Assembly: GCF_003918875.1 (NCBI RefSeq) | Contig: NW_025767302.1 | Coordinates: 1,922,001-1,986,000, forward strand | Direction: 5' to 3' | From: Haliotis rubra | Taxonomy: Eukaryota | DNA length: 64,000 bases | Shown: positions 836-46,786 of the stretch, piece after piece | Numbering within the stretch: position 1 is the first letter of the stretch | How the letters are laid out: every line of letters begins with the position of its first letter | Position numbers and translations under genes: made by a program | Notes under the pieces: generated by a model | The model's database searches: none | What the model was told of the DNA's origin: nothing | What the model saw: the letters and a program-made list of their open reading frames with translations, nothing else

Positions 836-1367
836 GATTGCGAGAAGTCTGTGCGAAAGAATGACCAAAAATAACTGTATGAACAAGTATTTCAAAGTAC
901 TTTACTATGACTAACCTTATCGATAATAAAACCAGCTTATTCGACAATTAATATCAAATATCACACCCTGTACTAAAACTACGTTGTACAAGCTTGAAGA
1001 AGCCCAGCATCTAGGGCATCTCTTCTAGTGGATTCAATAGAAAAAGAGTCATTATTTTCTTCGTCCGGCAGTTAAGATGTTACCTTTTCAGCAGATTGTG
1101 TGAATGACGGGTGCTACCGGAAACACCGGATATGCTTACCCTTCTGAGCGGACACTTGGAACCATCACTGCTTTTCAGTGGTCCATTCATGTGGTTCTCA
1201 CGGCTATTTTGACACTGGTTGGGATCTGTTTTTGAGGATAGTCAAGAATGGGTAAATGACGTTATATATACGCTTTTAACTTTCTTATCTATTTATAGGA
1301 GATGCAGAATTATTTAGTCACCTAAACCTTTTTGGAAACGGATGATGATTAAAGGGGGGTTGCACGT

Positions 1368-1669
1368 CAGTGTAATTAGTGTCCTGTGTGACACTGTGCC
1401 ACTCTGTCAGTATAATTAGTGTCCTGTGTGACACTGCCACTGTGTCAGTATAATTAGTGTCCTGTGAGACACTGCCACTGTGTCAGTATAATTAGTGTCC
1501 TGTGAGACACTACCACTGTGTCAGTATAATTAGTGTCCTGTGTGACACTACCACTGTGTCAGTATAATTAGTGTCCTGTGTGACACTGCCACTGTGTCAG
1601 TATAATTAGTGTCCTGTGTGACACTGCCACTGTGTCAGTATAATTAGTGTCCTGTGACACTGCCACTGT
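1368..1669. repeat. 38-bp minisatellite, left part
   Basis: Tandem copies of GTATAATTAGTGTCCTGTGTGACACTGCCACTGTGTCA. Each unit contains a TGACAC-7nt-GTGTCA inverted repeat. Confidence 0.95.
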
Positions 1670-2669
1670 TGCTGCGGCACCATCAGAACATAGTGGGCTG
1701 CCATTTCGCCGACCGGGCGACATTAAAGAACCATGACGCTTTTTCTTCGTATATGGTATGCCATGGGCGCTGCGCCATATCATGGTGTACTCGTGGGCGC
1801 AGCAATCATCAAAATGATGGTATTAACAATGCGGCATGTCCGGGTGGTATTACCATGGAGCGCTTTTCATCTTCGCGGTGGTATTATTCGAACGCAGGGG
1901 CGTATATTGGGCATAGCGAACGATAAGGTATGGGCCGTATACGGAACTTACGCTGTAATGAACATAATTGAACTTTCGAACGCTGGTGGCGATGAGCAAG
2001 TTGGTACTTTCCGTTTTGAACGCGCCCTTTGTAGTATTAAATGCCTCATTATTATTAATGACGCTTTCGCCGCCAGAACCATAATTGGTAATGCGCTTTA
2101 ACGCTCGTATCAGCGAAAACCAGGTAATGCGGAACGCTGCTTTCCAGCATCGTGGATATTACCGGAACGCAGCTGTGTCAAAGATGCCGTTAGCGTGTTT
2201 CAGCTGAACGCGCCGCTTCATGTCGAACTCATCGATGTAAAGGCGTATGTGGCGGTATCGTGGACGGGCTATTACCATGGAACGCTGGCACATATTCGAA
2301 CCGCATTATTTCATGTCCATGGAAGTGATGCGTACTTACGTGGCGGGCGCATATAACGGTAAAAAGAGTATGCGCCAGGCCGATGCGCATCATCGATGCG
2401 ATGATTAACGCTATCATATGACCGATATTATGGGCGCCGCGCATCAATGGTATGGTGGTAAATGCGGGCGCGTTTAATGGTATAACAAATTGAATGATGC
2501 GGCAATATCAGAGCGCCGATTGGTGCTTTCCGTATTGCTCCATTAATTAATCGCTTATAATTAATACCCTGGTTGAGCCCGCTACCATAATTAATCAAAG
2601 GTATAATTAGTGTTCTATGGCCAGCCCGCACCGCCACTGTATCAATTATAAATTAGATTAATCCTATTG
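1670..2669. other. Anomalous 1000-nt CpG-rich block interrupting the minisatellite (probable sequencing/assembly artefact or synthetic sequence)
   Basis: The repeat breaks at 1670 and resumes at 2670. The block is CpG-rich, has no recognisable protein, shows ACGC at about 38-nt spacing, and degraded repeat units reappear at 2601-2669. Confidence 0.65.
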
Positions 2670-3066
2670 AATTAGTGTCCTGTGTGACACTGCCACTGTG
2701 TCAGTATAATTAGTGCCCTGTGTGACACTGCCACTGTGTCAGTATAATTAGTGTCCTGTGTGACACTGCCACTGTGTCAGTATAATTAGTGTCCTGTGTG
2801 ACACTGCCACTGTGTCAGTATAATTAGTGTCCTGTGTGACACTGCCACTGTGTCAGTATAATTAGTGTCCTGTGTGACACTGCCACTGTGTCAGTATAAT
2901 TAGTGTCCTGTGTGACACTGCCACGGTGTCAGTATAATTAGTGTCCTGTGTGACACTGCTACTGTGTCAGTATAATTAGTGTCCTGTGTGACACTGCTGC
3001 TGTGTCAGTATAATTAGTGTCCTGTGTGACACTGTCACTGTGTACTGTCACTGTGAGTGTGATTAG
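2670..3066. repeat. 38-bp minisatellite, right part
   Basis: About 10 near-perfect copies of the same 38-mer. Confidence 0.95.
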
Positions 3067-3224: not shown

Positions 3225-4699
3225 TCATTGGCCTTTCCTCAGGGATAAAGCAATTGCAGCAACCCGGCCTTGGTCCTGAGCAAAGCGCATCTGAACAGCA
3301 TTGGCGTTTTGCTTGAGGATGGTCGGTGGAACATTATATTCTATTGTTGCCCAGAGATTGTCGGTGTCGTTGTTGCTTGGGTTGTGGAGAATGTAGTACG
3401 AGTGGAGATTTACTCCATTCATAGTTACAGAAACTGGAATATACTTGGCAGAATGATCAACGAAACTTACTGAAATGCGGAGTTTTGCTACCATAATGTG
3501 ATGAAGATCACTGCTGTGGAGCATGATGTTCATGTGAGCTGCTTTCCTGTTTATTATAACCAACATGTCGTCTCCATAATGCACACTTTCATAGACCAAG
3601 GGAACATGAGAAAATGTGTGACCTGTGGGAAACTGAAAGAAGCATGAAGATTCTGGAGGGACAGTCACCTGATTTCCATTGACATGAATAGGTACTTGCT
3701 TATCCAGTTGAGTGGCCCTCCTGTTATTGAGGTACAGACAGGTTGATGTCCCGTGGGTCAACCTTACCCATCCTTTGTCAAAAGCCAGTGTGACCTTAGC
3801 TTGGGCTGTGTCATAGTTGTGTAGCAGAACGGTTAGCATTTTGGAACTTGGTTCCACAAGGGCATGACTCTGTATCTGCCTCTCTGCCTGGTGGAACTGA
3901 CTCTCGGATCTGAGGAACTTCATACTGCTGGTGATGTTGTCCCACAGGTGGAAGGCCAGAGCTATGTCTCTCTCGTTTTTATTCTTGTCCAGGATACTGT
4001 AGTTGATGCTTTCTTGGCCTTGCCTGTTGCTGTAACTAAGAAGGAAGGACACAGCCCTGTCCACCACGTACCGAAGCTCAAGAAAGGTGAATATATTCGA
4101 GTTGTGAAGGTTGATGTAAGCCCAGTCCAAGAGGGTCGATGGTTTCTGGACATCGATGCCTGTGACCGTTGCTAGACCATGAGCGGAGAATATGATTGGA
4201 ACATCTTTTCCAGTCATCATATTAGCATATGTTTCCACAATGTCCACCGTCCCAACTAGCCTAGCCTCATTTGGGCCATAAAACCGATATCTGTTCCCCT
4301 GGACGACAAAGTGATTGAAAGGATGGAATGAAAAGAAGTCCAATAGGCCAAGGGACATGTTCATGAATTGCGTCATCCAGCTCCATTGACGAAAGTTCTG
4401 TTTATCAAAATAGGTTATTCCACCAGTAAAGGCAGGCCCGCCTATCTTTATTTGGGGATATATGGCTTTCACCTTCTTGGCCACAAGCTCGAATACAGTC
4501 ACTACGGTTGTCCAATTGACATCCAACTTCCACAGTGTGTTTGGCTCATTGATTGGTTCAAAATATGGAGGGACTGCGCCGTTAGAACCGTTGTATATTG
4601 CCTGGACGTGTAGAGATATGGTTTCCGCAGCAGCATCAAGATTGCTTGGAAAGTGACCCTTATGTGCAGATTTGTCCATCCAGTGAGGCCATAAGTTAC
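3225..4699 (-). CDS. GH86 beta-porphyranase/beta-agarase-like glycoside hydrolase, exon 3 (catalytic barrel and C-terminal beta-sandwich domains)
   Basis: Motifs YFEPINEP (acid/base NE), KIGG, LDFFSFHP, D-x-VE-x-Y, and a C-terminal LRIS..V.MNG..IE..N.V...F...GRV pattern resemble Bacteroidetes beta-porphyranase A. The AG acceptor at 4701-4700 is phase 1 and in frame with exon 2. The joined CDS is 1842 nt, 613 aa. Confidence 0.85.
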
Positions 4700-20809: not shown

Positions 20810-21910
20810 ATGTCACGATCCACCGGTGCATCGCCGGCAAGATTTGCACGATACGATGCACGATTCATTTGTATTAGTATCGACATACATCGATTATTAT
20901 TTTGATATAGCACATTATATCACACAACACTTTTGTTGGAAAATACAAACAAAACAGTGAAGTTAACACATTTTCCATTGTATTTTGTTATACAGAACAT
21001 AAGATATGACTTGGTGAGTGTGGTTGATGATACTTGGCTGATACTCAGTCTTCCCTTCTCTAGTAATCTCTTCCACGTATCGTATTGTGACCTCAGTGTC
21101 GCGATACGTAATACTATCGTATTGTTACCTCAGTATCGCGATACGTAATACTATCGTATTGTGACCTCAGTGTCGCGATACGTAATACTATCGTATAGTT
21201 ACCTCAGTATCGCGATACGTAATACTATCGTATTGTTACCTCAGTGTCGCGATACGTCTCGTGTCGTGACCTCAGTATCGCGATACGTATCGTATTGTGA
21301 CCTCAGTGTCGCGATACGTAATACTATCGTATTGTTACCTCAGTGTCGCGATACGTCTCGTGTCGTGACCTCAGTATCGCGATACGTAATACTATCGTAT
21401 TGTTACTTCAGTGTCGCGATACGTAATACTATCGTATTGTTACCTCAGTATCGCGATACGTAAGACTATTGTATTGTTACCTCAGTGTCGCGATACGTCT
21501 CGTGTCGTGACCTCAGTATCGCGATACGTATCGTATTGTGACCTCAGTATCGCGAAACGTATCGTATTGTGACCTCAGTATCGCGATACTTATCGTATTG
21601 TGACATCAGTATCGCGATACTTATCGTATTGTGACATCAGTATCGCGATACGTAATACTATCGTATTGTAACTTCAGTGTCGCGATACGTCTCGTTTCGT
21701 GACCTCAGTATCGCGATACGTATCATAATGTGACCTCAGTATCGCGATACTTATCGTATTGTGACCTCAGTGTCGCGATACGTATCGTGTTGTGACCTCA
21801 GTATCGCGATACGTATCGTGTCGTGACCTCAGTGTCGCGATACGTATCGTGTTGTGACCTCAGTATCACGATACGTATCGTATCGTGAGGCACCTATGTC
21901 GTGACATCCT
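20810..21910. mobile_element. Non-autonomous TIR element whose subterminal repeats expanded into a satellite
   Basis: ATGTCACGA at about 20810 and TCGTGACAT at about 21899-21907 are inverted. CGATAC-type subterminal repeats occur at both ends. Confidence 0.5.
21076..21890. repeat. CpG-rich minisatellite with palindromic GTATCGCGATAC core (about 30/37-bp variants)
   Basis: More than 20 copies of GTGACCTCAGT(A/G)TCGCGATACGT[AATACT]ATCGTATT. Confidence 0.95.
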
Positions 21911-38861: not shown

Positions 38862-40168
38862 TTCCCAACACAATCGGGGACCTCTGGAGGATGTACATAT
38901 TGACAGTTTTGTGTCTGACAGAATGAAGGTCCCTTGGAAGATGTACTGTTAGTGTGTGATCCCAGCACAATCAGGGACCTCTGGAGGATGTACATATTTA
39001 CAATTTTGTGACTCTTGACACAATGAGGGCCCCTTGGAAGATGTACTGTTAGTGTGTGATCCCAGCACAACCAGGGACCTCTGGAGGATGTACCCGGTAC
39101 ATATTTACAGTTTTGTGACTCTGACACAATGAGGGCCCCTTGGAAGATGTACTGTTAGTGTGTGATCCGAACACAATCAGGGACCTCTGGAGGATGTACC
39201 CGGTACATATTTACAGTTTTGTGACTGACACAATGAGGGCCCCTTGGAAGATGTACTGTTAGTGTGTGATCCAGCACAATCAGGGAGCTCAGGAGGATGT
39301 ACATATTTACAGTTTTGTGACTCTTGACACAATGAGGGCCCCTTGGAAGATGTACTGTTAGTTTGTGATCCCAACACAACCAGGGACCTCTGGAGGATGT
39401 ACATATTGGCAGTGTGTGACTCTTACAGTAAGGGCCCCGTGGAAGATGTACTGTTTGTGTGTGATCCCAACACAATCAGGGACCTCTGGAGGATGTACAT
39501 ATTGGCAGTTGTGTGTCTGACACAATGAGGGCCCCTTGGAAGATGTACTGTTAGTGTGTGATCCGAACACAATCAGGGACCTCTGGAGGATGTACCCGGT
39601 ACATATTTACAGTTTTGTGACTGACACAATGAGGGCCCCTTGGAAGATGTACTGTTAGTGTGTGATCCCAGCACAATCAGGGAGCTCAGGAGGATGTACA
39701 TATTTACAGTTTTGTGACTCTTGACACAATGAGGGCCCCTTGGAAGATGTACTGTTAGTGTGTGATCCCAACACAACCAGGGACCTCTGGAGGATGTACA
39801 TATTGGCAGTGTGTGACTCTTACAGTAAGGGCCCCGTGGAAGATGTACTGTTTGTGTGTGATCCCAACACAATCAGGGACCTCTGGAGGATGTACATATT
39901 GGCAGTTGTGTGTCTGACACAATGAGGGCCCCTTGGAAGATGTACTGTTAGTGTGTGATCCCAACACAACCAGGGACCTCTGGAGGATGTACATATTGGC
40001 AGTGTGTGACTCTTACAGTAAGGGCCCCGTGGAAGATGTACTGTTTGTGTGTGATCCCAACACAATCAGGGACCTCTGGAGGATGTACATATTGGCAGTT
40101 GTGTGTCTGACACAATGAGGGCCCCTTGGAAGATGTACTGTTAGTGTGTATTCCCAACACAACCAGGG
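38862..40168. repeat. ~97-bp satellite with higher-order structure
   Basis: About 13 monomers (CACAATCAGGGACCTCTGGAGGATGTACATATT..GAGGGCCCCTTGGAAGATGTACTGTTAGTGTGTGATCC). Variants recur with ~397-bp and ~193-bp periods. Confidence 0.95.
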
Positions 40169-44320: not shown

Positions 44321-44947
44321 TTACCTGTTAACACAATGCAACCCAATTGCCAAAAGTAGATACACATGTATATCTTATTTCCTTTTGAAATGTCCTGTAC
44401 TATAGTGTCCTGACTAATGCCCAACACAAAACGCATTATTTTTAATATGGTCCACGATAACAAGTGGAGATAACCCATGTGAGGTTTTAGTTTATATATT
44501 ATAAACAACCACAAACAATTGTTTTAACTTTAAGGCAAGCTCCAGTGTAAGGAATACAATGAAAGGTCACAAATCACTGAAAACTGAAGTGTATGCAAGA
44601 AAGAAAACAAATATATATATCTTTAAAAATGTATTAACAAATGTACCAAATAAACAATGGAAGAAACATGACTTTTAAAAGTAGCACTGGTTGCAAGCTT
44701 CAGGATGTGATTTATCCTGTGTTTGTGAACTTGTAACTCTCATATTCAGATCCTTATCACCATGATCACAGATAGATGTGTTGGATGTGTTGTGTCAGCA
44801 ATGTTTTGACAGTCACACAGTCAAATTCAGTGCCTGATGTCCTAATCCACTGGTTGATCTCTTCTACATATCACATGTATTTGTGTCTTCTACATATCAC
44901 ATATATTTGTGTCTTCTACATATCACATATTTGTGATATATACAGGT

Positions 44948-46786
44948 TGGTATCTCCGGAAGTCACCAGACATCGCACTCCACTTGGTATCTCCAGAAGT
45001 CACCACACATCGCACTCCACTTGGTGTCTCTGGAAGTCACCAGACATCGCACTCTACTTGGTGTCTCCAGAAGTCACTAGACATCGCACTCCACTTGGTG
45101 TCTCCGGAAGTCATCAGACATCGCGCTCCACTTGGTGTCTCCGGAAGTCATCAGACATCGCGCTCCACTTGGTGTCTCCGGAAGTCACCAGACATCACAC
45201 TCCACTTGGTGTCTCCTGAAGTCACCATACATCACACTCCACTTGGTGTCTCCGGAAATCACCAGACATCGCACTCCACTTGGTGTCTCCGGAAGTCACC
45301 AGACATCGCACTCCACTTGGTGTCTCCGGAAGTCACCAGACATCGCACTCCACTTGGTGTCTCCGGAAGTCACCAGACATCACACTCCACTTGGTGTCTC
45401 CGGAAGTCACCACACATCGCACTCCACTTGGTGTCTGCGGAAGTCACCAGACATCGCACTCCACTTGGTGTCTCCCGAAGTCACCAGACATCGCACTCCA
45501 CTTGGTGTCTCCGGAAGTCACCAGACATCACACTCCACTTGGTGTCTCCAGAAGTCACCAGACATCGCACTCCACTTGGTGTCTCCAGAAGTCACCAGAC
45601 ATCGAACTCCACTTGGTGTCTTCCGAAGTCACCAGACATCGAACTCCACTTGGTGTCTTCGGAAGTCACCACACATCGTGCTCCACTTGGTGTCTGCGGA
45701 AGTCACCACACATCACACTCCACTTGGTGTCTCCGGAAGTCACCACACATCGCACTCTACTTGGTGTCTGCGGAAGTCACCACACATCGCACTCCACTTG
45801 GTATCTCTGGAAGTCACCAGACATCGCACTCCACTTGGTGTCTCCGGAAGTCACAAGACATCGCACTCCACTTGGTTTCTCCGGAAGTCACCACACATCG
45901 CACTCCACTTGGTGTCTGCGGAAGTCAACACACATCGCACTCCACTTGGTGTCTCCAGAAGTCACCAGACATCGCACTCCACTTGGTGTCTCCGGAAGTC
46001 ACAAGACATCGCACTCCACTTGGTGTCTCCGGAAGTCACCACACATCGCACTCCACTTGGTGTCTCCGGAAGTCACCAGACATCGCACTCCACTTGGTGT
46101 CTCCGGAAGTCAACAGACATCGCACTCCACTTGGTTTCTCCGGAAGTCACCACACATCGCGCTCCACTTGGTGTCTCCAGAAGTCACCAGACATCGCACT
46201 CCACTTGGTGTCTCCGGAAGTCACCACACATCGCACTCCACTTGGTTTCTCCGGAAGTCACCACACATCGCACTCCACTTGGTGTCTCCAGAAGTCACCA
46301 GACATCGCACTCCAATTGGTGTCTCCGGAAGTCACAAGACATCGCAGTCCACTTGGTGTCTCCAGAAGTCACCAGACATCGCACTCCAATTGGTGTCTCC
46401 GGAAGTCACAAGACATCGCAGTCCACTTGGTGTCTCCAGAAGTCACCAGACATCGCACTCCAATTGGTGTCTCCGGAAGTCACCAGACATCGCACTCCAC
46501 TTGGTGTCTCCAGAAGTCACCAGACATCGCACTCAACTTTGTGTGTTCGGAAGTCACCAGACATCGTGACTCCAATTGGTGTCTCCGAAGTCACAAGACA
46601 TCGCGAGTCCACTTGGTGTCTCCAGAAGTCACAGACAGACAATTGGGTCACCAGACATTGGGCACTCCATGTTTAGGTCTTCTGTCAATCACCAGACATC
46701 GCTCTCCACACGTTGGTGTCTCCGGGAGTCATCAGATATAGTTTCGCTCTAAACGTTTGGGGTTGTCTGTAAATCACCACACATCA
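44948..46786. repeat. 37-bp satellite forming the CTC1 3' flank/UTR
   Basis: About 48 copies of TTGGTGTCTCCGGAAGTCACCAGACATCGCACTCCAC, degenerate at 46530-46786. Confidence 0.97.

What the first reader, a model, noticed from the sequence alone, without database searches (positions are those of the whole stretch)
1670..2669. Exactly 1000 nt of bacterial-looking sequence inside a minisatellite, retaining the repeat's 38-nt period
Seen: the 38-mer array first mismatches at 1670 and resumes at 2670, so the block is exactly 1000 nt. It is much richer in CpG than its surroundings, with recurrent GAACGC, ATTACCATGG and TGGGCGC, but has no TSD, TIR or recognisable protein. ACGC starts at 1980, 2020, 2061, 2101, 2134, 2167, 2208 and 2282, a mean spacing of 37.75 nt if one site near 2245 is missing. 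Half-recognisable repeat units fade back in at 2601-2669. Inference: this is the same minisatellite rendered by a low-quality basecall left unpolished (for example two 500-nt polishing windows), or machine-generated infill. It is probably not horizontally acquired DNA. A real hypermutated array or foreign insert is the less likely alternative.
Basis: partly seen in the sequence, partly recalled or inferred. Interest (0 to 1): 0.7.

Follow-up and report, generated by a model that had tools for sequence, protein, structure and literature searches.

The report
Unpolished garbled stretch inside abalone minisatellite
The 1000-letter "bacterial-looking" block inside an abalone tandem repeat is most likely that repeat, badly misread by nanopore sequencing and left uncorrected during assembly, and not real or foreign DNA.

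Summary
The block is there as described. It is exactly 1000 nt (1670-2669), lies between two clean parts of a locus-specific 38-nt minisatellite, and has CpG o/e 1.49 against 0.59 for the rest of the window. It is unique in the 1.38-Gb genome, which an NCBI protein name and the assembly size identify as the published Haliotis rubra nanopore assembly.

Its oligonucleotide statistics fit enterobacterial models as well as held-out E. coli does. Yet all six frames carry stops, no frame scores as coding, and no credible homologue turned up in any nucleotide or protein search.

A block-wide 38-nt period is not supported. Two traces of the array survive: garbled units at 2556-2669, and a run of GAACGC anchors at 1978-2320, spaced 33-41 nt, whose spacers match the unit in the correct register.

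The published pipeline used two rounds of Racon, which splices independent 500-nt windows. The repeat phase breaks at the right boundary.

Best reading (about 0.6): two unpolished Racon windows of a severely garbled nanopore backbone. Rivals: context-aware machine-generated infill (0.15), another assembly step (0.08), real foreign insert (0.05), real diverged array core (0.04). Read mapping would settle it. Low interest; not a real feature.

The parts
1366..1669 (+). Left, clean part of the 38-nt minisatellite (8 units). The last unit is 36 nt and ends exactly at a unit boundary.
   Evidence: Tandem Repeats Finder: period 38, 8.0 copies, 96% matches. Units printed in register. No CpG.
1670..2669 (.). 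The 1000-nt block. It is CpG-rich, has an enterobacterial-like oligonucleotide make-up, is non-coding, and is unique in the genome. It is interpreted as two unpolished 500-nt polishing windows of garbled nanopore-derived backbone.
   Evidence: No homologue.
1978..2320 (+). Stretch inside the block where GAACGC-type anchors recur every 33-41 nt. The spacers weakly match the array unit in the register GAACGC = GACAC.
   Evidence: Chain of 6 ACGC spacings, above every shuffle and every control window. The correct register ranks 1 of 38, p = 0.002-0.014 with the anchor removed.
2556..2669 (+). About three garbled array units at roughly 66% identity, rich in indels. The last is cut near unit position 25, and the clean array then resumes at unit position 9.
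   Evidence: blastn with word size 7 against the array, local alignment scores, wrap-around score 25 against 1.7 for shuffles, junction printed.
2670..3043 (+). Right, clean part of the same minisatellite (9.8 units).
   Evidence: Tandem Repeats Finder: period 38, 97% matches, no indels. The unit occurs nowhere else in the genome.
3225..4679 (-). Context: last exon of a GH86-like (beta-porphyranase A-like) abalone gene. The array lies about 180 nt beyond its stop codon.
   Evidence: ORF of 484 aa. It is 95% identical to NCBI 'uncharacterized protein LOC124255411 [Haliotis rubra]' and 81% identical to H. rufescens 'beta-porphyranase A-like'.

Best explanation
The block is an assembly artefact, not abalone or bacterial DNA.

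The true locus is a 38-nt minisatellite in the 3' flank of a GH86-like gene. In the draft backbone, which came from wtdbg or DBG2OLC and so from raw Albacore-called nanopore reads, the middle of this array was represented by a severely garbled basecall.

In the last Racon round the draft was cut into independent 500-nt windows. The windows on either side received read chunks anchored in unique flank and were rebuilt as clean 38-mers. Two adjacent central windows received too few usable chunks and were passed through unchanged. That gives exactly 1000 nt of uncorrected backbone, with abrupt edges. Pilon could not repair it because no Illumina read maps there.

Shown here: the exact length, the phase break at the right edge, the in-register traces of the array, the absence of homologues and of coding capacity, and the documented pipeline.

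Inferred: that the windows were left unpolished, and that the enterobacterial-like k-mer make-up is the neural basecaller's learned sequence prior showing through where the signal was uninformative. One possible source of such signal is a 2D-library complement strand called with a 1D model.
For: Length and pipeline:
- The block is exactly 1000 nt between perfect units.
- The assembly used 2x Racon v1.2.0 and 1x Pilon on wtdbg and DBG2OLC drafts.
- Racon processes non-overlapping windows independently, drops low-quality read chunks and splices the results. The window size is 500.

Boundaries:
- The phase breaks at the right edge: a garbled unit is cut near position 25 and the clean array restarts at position 9.
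- Clean units stop abruptly at 1669, at the end of a 36-nt unit.

Traces of the array inside the block:
- Garbled units at 2556-2669.
- A run of ACGC at 33-41 nt spacing, beyond all controls.
- Spacers that match the unit best in the correct register, 1 of 38.

Not genuine bacterial or other known DNA:
- Only a self-match in the 1.38-Gb genome.
- No blastn hit in 5,426 E. coli genomes, and only 26-34-nt matches at E = 1-4 in plasmids and phages.
- Only 20-58-nt chance hits in 802 gammaproteobacterial genomes.
- No tblastn relative and no credible hit among 1.84 billion protein representatives.
- No Pfam, NCBIfam or Rfam match.

Not coding:
- 12-19 stops in every frame, and a longest open run of 124 codons against a minimum of 143 in E. 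coli windows.
- Codon log-odds scores near zero or negative in all frames.

Not in a relative: the H. rufescens orthologous locus has a continuous degenerate proto-array and nothing like the block.

Setting:
- The libraries included five 2D (LSK-208) preparations called with Albacore 2.3.3.
- Other unchecked notes on this genome report noisy fold-back arms and an error-ridden tandem array.
Against: - No reads were available, so the lack of read support is inferred and not observed.
- The block fits enterobacterial Markov models as well as held-out E. coli does. It also has a coherent period-3 signal: P3 ratio 4.7, against about 1.6 for error-laden or Markov-simulated E. coli. I found no paper showing that garbled nanopore calls look like this, so the basecaller-prior step is my conjecture.
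- Most of the block (1670-1977 and 2321-2555) shows no detectable similarity to the unit. That is far worse than ordinary nanopore error.
- Reads spanning the array should normally have supplied chunks to the central windows. This reading therefore needs broken alignments or chunks removed by the quality filter.
Confidence: 0.6

Rival explanations
1. The block is machine-generated infill. A context-aware generative sequence model, trained largely on bacterial genomes, wrote 1000 letters in place of 1000 original letters. This could have happened in some processing step or as a deliberate substitution, working leftwards from the right-hand context.
For: - The length is exactly 1000 and round.
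- The composition is a caricature of enterobacterial DNA: CG 1.48, GC 1.61, AT 1.57, and TA 1.17 where real enterobacteria have 0.7-0.8.
- It is pseudo-coding: period 3 is present, but so are stops in every frame.
- Array copies decay from right to left, and array-period echoes appear mid-block, as a model copying its context might produce.
- The total genome length is unchanged, which is compatible with an in-place swap.
- There is no homologue anywhere.
Against: - No such step exists in the published 2019 pipeline.
- Nothing in the scan's notes mentions infill, and no other note reports a similar block.
- A model given eight perfect copies as context would be expected to continue them in phase. 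Here the phase is broken at the edge where generation would have begun.
- The documented 500-nt Racon window explains the length equally well.
Confidence: 0.15
2. The block is an assembly artefact from another step. Garbage may have been produced or retained by wtdbg or DBG2OLC consensus, by QuickMerge splicing or by Pilon, and the length of exactly 1000 is a coincidence.
For: The pipeline has several consensus and merging steps working on raw-read backbones. The evidence against real DNA is the same as for the best explanation.
Against: None of these steps has a 500- or 1000-nt unit that I know of (my own knowledge). An exact 1000 by chance is roughly a one-in-a-thousand coincidence.
Confidence: 0.08
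3. The block is a real foreign insert: bacterial DNA (horizontal transfer or a contaminant chimera) or a unique mobile element that landed inside the minisatellite.
For: It has an enterobacterial-like k-mer make-up and a high CpG content. It sits next to a GH86-like gene family of bacterial type.
Against: - There is no homologue in E. coli, plasmids, phages, 802 gammaproteobacterial genomes or 1.84 billion protein representatives.
- There is no open frame.
- There is no target-site duplication, no terminal repeats and no second copy in the genome.
- The block carries in-register traces of the host array. Foreign DNA would not.
- It is absent from the H. rufescens locus.
Confidence: 0.05
4. The block is a real, old, diverged core of the array, flanked by recently homogenised units.
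For: There are traces of the unit in register and degenerate units at the right end. Minisatellites can have variant interiors.
Against: - The unit has no CpG, and the genome depletes CpG (o/e 0.59). Divergence cannot create 82 CpGs and an enterobacterial signature.
- The H. rufescens proto-array is CpG-poor and continuous.
- Both edges are abrupt, and the length is exactly 1000.
Confidence: 0.04

Closest known systems
Unpolished windows left by the Racon consensus tool in long-read assemblies
   Same: Racon cuts the backbone into non-overlapping windows, polishes each independently and splices the results. The window size is 500. This assembly used two Racon rounds. The block is 2 x 500 nt, with abrupt edges and a phase break at the right one.
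   Different: That a window with too few read chunks is returned unchanged is my own knowledge of the program, not something I read here. The content of the unpolished stretch is far more garbled than a usual draft consensus.
Systematic nanopore miscalling of tandem repeats (for example, telomeric repeats called as other repeats)
   Same: A repeat is rendered as different letters by a neural basecaller while keeping some periodicity (my own knowledge, no paper read here). Here GAACGC anchors recur at 33-41 nt and stand in for GACAC of the unit.
   Different: Known cases give a regular wrong repeat. Here only the anchor recurs and the rest varies, and most of the block has no detectable period.
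2D (hairpin) nanopore reads base-called as 1D, which give fold-back reads with a noisy complement arm
   Same: Five LSK-208 2D libraries were called with Albacore 2.3.3. Unchecked notes on this genome describe noisy, compressed mirror-image arms. This is a plausible source of very poor backbone sequence.
   Different: The block is not a mirror image of anything nearby: there are no reverse-strand matches. The link is conjecture.
Output of generative DNA language models or Markov generators trained on bacterial genomes
   Same: Bacterial-like k-mers, a period-3 signal, no real open frame and no homologue.
   Different: A context-free generator would not reproduce the host array's units and register. 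No such step is documented for this assembly.

Membership tests
Horizontally acquired or contaminant bacterial DNA | A detectable homologue in bacterial sequence collections | tested here: not met
   No match in 5,426 E. coli genomes. Only short hits at E of 1 or more in plasmids and phages. Only 20-58-nt chance hits in 802 gammaproteobacterial genomes. No tblastn relative. The three protein hits are tandem-repeat proteins matched in 6-11 weak stretches each.
Horizontally acquired or contaminant bacterial DNA | Gene-dense sequence with long open reading frames | tested here: not met
   Longest open run is 124 codons, against a minimum of 143 and a median of 247 in E. coli 1-kb windows. Every frame has 12-19 stops. 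Codon log-odds are near zero or negative.
Horizontally acquired or contaminant bacterial DNA | Bacterial oligonucleotide composition | tested here: met
   The order-4 Markov log-odds (E. coli against host) is 0.115. Held-out E. coli gives 0.110 +/- 0.035 and host windows give -0.135 +/- 0.045. E. coli, Salmonella and lambda models fit best of seven. TA is not depleted, which makes the signature exaggerated.
Transposable element insertion | Terminal repeats, a target-site duplication, and further copies in the genome | tested here: not met
   No terminal inverted or direct repeats at the ends. No duplication at the junctions. Only a self-match in 1.38 Gb.
Genuine variant-repeat interior of a minisatellite | The unit period and a composition continuous with the array | tested here: not met
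   No block-wide 38-nt period. 82 CpGs in the block against 0-1 in the array. The H. rufescens proto-array is continuous and CpG-poor. Only local traces of the unit remain.
Unpolished Racon windows | A length that is a multiple of the 500-nt window, in an assembly polished with Racon | tested here: met
   1000 nt exactly. Two rounds of Racon v1.2.0. Non-overlapping windows spliced together. Window size 500.
Unpolished Racon windows | Discontinuity at the edges between polished and unpolished sequence | tested here: met
   Clean units stop abruptly at 1669. On the right, a garbled unit is cut near position 25 and the clean array restarts at position 9.
Unpolished Racon windows | No read support for the stretch, and block edges that fall on window boundaries of the Racon input | not testable with these tools

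The most novel reading that the evidence does not exclude
The 1000 nt are real germline DNA of this abalone: a very recent, single-copy, CpG-rich sequence of bacterial composition created or captured inside a minisatellite, with a partial imprint of the array's period. An example would be template switching during array replication or repair. No known mechanism predicts this.
Probability: 0.05. Interest if true: 0.7.

Novelty: not a real feature. Interest (0 to 1): 0.1.

Why it matters
Biologically it matters little. The locus is an ordinary minisatellite in the 3' flank of a GH86-like gene, and its true length in this animal remains unknown.

It matters for data quality. It is a concrete example of a public nanopore assembly carrying kilobase-scale invented sequence that mimics bacterial DNA. 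Such sequence could be mistaken for horizontal transfer or contamination, especially here, beside a gene family of bacterial type.

It also gives a cheap screen for similar artefacts in Racon-polished assemblies: stretches whose length is a multiple of 500 nt, with foreign k-mer composition, no homologue and abrupt edges inside repeats.

Tried and rejected
- Block-wide 38-nt period: autocorrelation, Rayleigh test, Tandem Repeats Finder and wrap-around alignment were all negative.
- Noisy read of a real bacterial gene: simulated indel errors destroy the coherent period-3 signal that the block keeps, and DNA searches found nothing.
- Simple Markov-chain product: rejected for a context-free generator, because array units and the correct register are present. 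The P3 ratio of 4.7 is also just above the highest of the 120 simulated sequences (4.62).
- Garbled mirror image of nearby sequence: no reverse-strand matches.
Dropped.
- Sibling blocks in the genome, sought with a triple-GAACGC pattern: the search returned only genuine minisatellites.
- Independent copy of the public record through the neighbouring gene's protein: records of the window's own genome are left out of that tool.
- Papers on basecaller "hallucination": nothing relevant found.
- The three hits of the large protein search are tandem-repeat proteins with many weak stretches, not homologues.

Full report
**What is there**

The window is part of a 1.38-Gb, 2855-contig animal genome. 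The neighbouring gene's product is 95% identical to an NCBI protein named for Haliotis rubra. From memory, that is the size of the species' mitochondrial genome.

A 38-nt minisatellite (unit GTCAGTATAATTAGTGTCCTGTGTGACACTGCCACTGT) occupies 1366-1669 and 2670-3043. It lies about 180 nt beyond the stop codon of a GH86-like gene on the minus strand. The unit occurs nowhere else in the genome.

A paralogous gene flank 6.7 kb upstream has a single unit-like sequence and no array. In H. rufescens, both tandem GH86-like genes are followed by a continuous, degenerate proto-array of about 260 nt. The array is therefore an ordinary lineage-specific expansion of an old repeat.

**Check of the observation**

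The first mismatch to the array is at 1670 and perfect units resume at 2670, so the block is exactly 1000 nt.
- It has 82 CpGs (o/e 1.49). The rest of the window has o/e 0.59, and the two array parts have none and one.
- The listed motifs and ACGC positions are correct.
- The half-recognisable units at the right end are real and start earlier than stated, at about 2556. They are about 66% identical to the array, with many indels.
- The last garbled unit is cut near unit position 25, and the clean array restarts at position 9. This is a phase break.
- On the left, the clean array ends abruptly at the end of a 36-nt unit.

A 38-nt period over the whole block is not supported.
- Lag-38 identity is at background, and the strongest lag is 3.
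- The Rayleigh test on ACGC positions is not significant.
- Tandem Repeats Finder sees nothing inside the block.
- A wrap-around alignment of 1670-2555 to the unit is within the range of shuffles.

A local trace is real, however.
- Six consecutive ACGC spacings of 33-41 nt (1980-2208) exceed every one of 200 shuffles and 146 real enterobacterial windows.
- The segments between the GAACGC-type anchors (1978-2320) were aligned to the unit with the anchor removed. They fit best in the register where GAACGC stands for GACAC: rank 1 of 38 registers, p = 0.014 against shuffles and 0.002 or less against random pieces of the block or of E. coli.

**What the block is like**

Under order-2 to order-5 Markov models it fits E. 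coli, Salmonella and phage lambda best. It fits as well as held-out E. coli does, and lies more than five standard deviations from host windows. No other 500-nt stretch of the window, or of a dozen other loci from this genome, behaves this way. The one partial exception is a CpG-bearing minisatellite, at a much lower score.

It is nevertheless not bacterial coding DNA.
- Every frame has 12-19 stops. The longest open run is 124 codons, against a minimum of 143 in E. coli windows.
- Codon log-odds are near zero or negative in all six frames.
- The dinucleotide signature is a caricature: CG 1.48, GC 1.61, AT 1.57, and TA 1.17 where enterobacteria have 0.7-0.8.
- It does keep a coherent period-3 signal (ratio 4.7). 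Simulated indel-laden reads and Markov simulations gave about 1.6, with a maximum of 4.6. This argues against a noisy read of a real gene and against a low-order Markov product.

**Homology**

- Own genome: only a self-match.
- 5,426 complete E. coli genomes: nothing.
- Plasmids and phages: only matches of about 30 nt at E of 1 or more.
- 802 gammaproteobacterial genomes, half of them Enterobacterales: only 20-58-nt hits, at about the number expected by chance.
- The 122-aa ORF: no tblastn relative.
- 1.84 billion protein representatives: three hits, all tandem-repeat proteins matched in 6-11 weak stretches.
- Pfam, NCBIfam and Rfam: nothing.
- H. rufescens locus: nothing like the block.
- No terminal repeats and no target-site duplication.

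**Explanation**

The assembly paper reports Albacore 2.3.3 base-calling of 14 1D and five 2D (LSK-208) libraries. It reports wtdbg and DBG2OLC drafts, two rounds of Racon v1.2.0, one of Pilon, and then QuickMerge. Racon cuts the backbone into non-overlapping windows, drops low-quality read chunks, builds each window's consensus independently and splices them. The window size is 500. From my own knowledge of the program, a window with too few chunks is returned unchanged.

Two adjacent unpolished windows give exactly 1000 nt of raw backbone between polished windows. Such a block would have abrupt edges and need not keep the repeat phase. This also explains why the garbled units on the right stop mid-unit. 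The traces of the array in register say that the backbone was a very poor rendering of the array itself, not unrelated DNA.

The enterobacterial-like make-up would then be the neural basecaller's learned prior showing through. That step is my conjecture, and I found no paper on it.

Unchecked notes from this scan report noisy fold-back arms and an error-ridden tandem array elsewhere in this genome. These fit 2D reads called as 1D and poor polishing inside repeats.

**Rivals**

- A context-aware generative infill of exactly 1000 letters would explain the caricature composition and the right-to-left decay of array copies. But it is not part of the documented pipeline. It would be expected to start in phase. 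No similar note exists in the scan.
- A foreign insert fails on homology, on open frames, and on the presence of array traces.
- A genuinely diverged array core cannot gain 82 CpGs in a CpG-depleting genome.
- Another assembly step is possible, but it leaves the exact 1000 unexplained.

**Verdict**

Not a real feature, with about 0.85 overall probability of being non-biological. The specific mechanism, two unpolished Racon windows, is at about 0.6. The decisive test is read mapping and k-mer support, which these tools cannot do.

I found no earlier report of this kind of block on other DNA in the scan's notes.

Noticed in passing
L124:1861-2119 and L124:11788-12046 (H. rufescens); L013:1500-1560 (H. 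rubra paralogue, 6.7 kb upstream of the block): The 38-nt minisatellite grew from an older degenerate repeat. Both tandem GH86-like genes of H. rufescens carry a proto-array of about 260 nt in their 3' flank. The H. rubra paralogue keeps a single unit.
   Followed up: partly
window 21075-21888: A genuine CpG-rich 31-nt minisatellite (24.5 copies) gives the highest CpG o/e in the window, above 2. High CpG alone does not therefore mark an artefact in this genome.
   Followed up: partly
window 1091-1255: A dispersed repeat of about 165 nt just left of the array has at least 40 copies at 70-80% identity across the genome (157 first-look candidates, 40 scored). It is probably a SINE-like element.
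   Followed up: no
L013:230-300: A tRNA-like stretch (GGGGATCGAACCCGCGACC...) suggests a tRNA-derived SINE upstream of the paralogous GH86-like gene.
   Followed up: no
whole assembly (paper PMC6774278): Five obsolete 2D (LSK-208) nanopore libraries were base-called with Albacore 2.3.3. This would produce template-hairpin-complement reads, and it is a likely cause of the noisy fold-back blocks that other readers noted in this genome.
   Followed up: no
window 1-64000: The window is unusually rich in minisatellites, with 40 Tandem Repeats Finder rows. They include a 37-nt array of 45.7 copies at 44947-46637 and a 97-nt array at 38863-40168.
   Followed up: no
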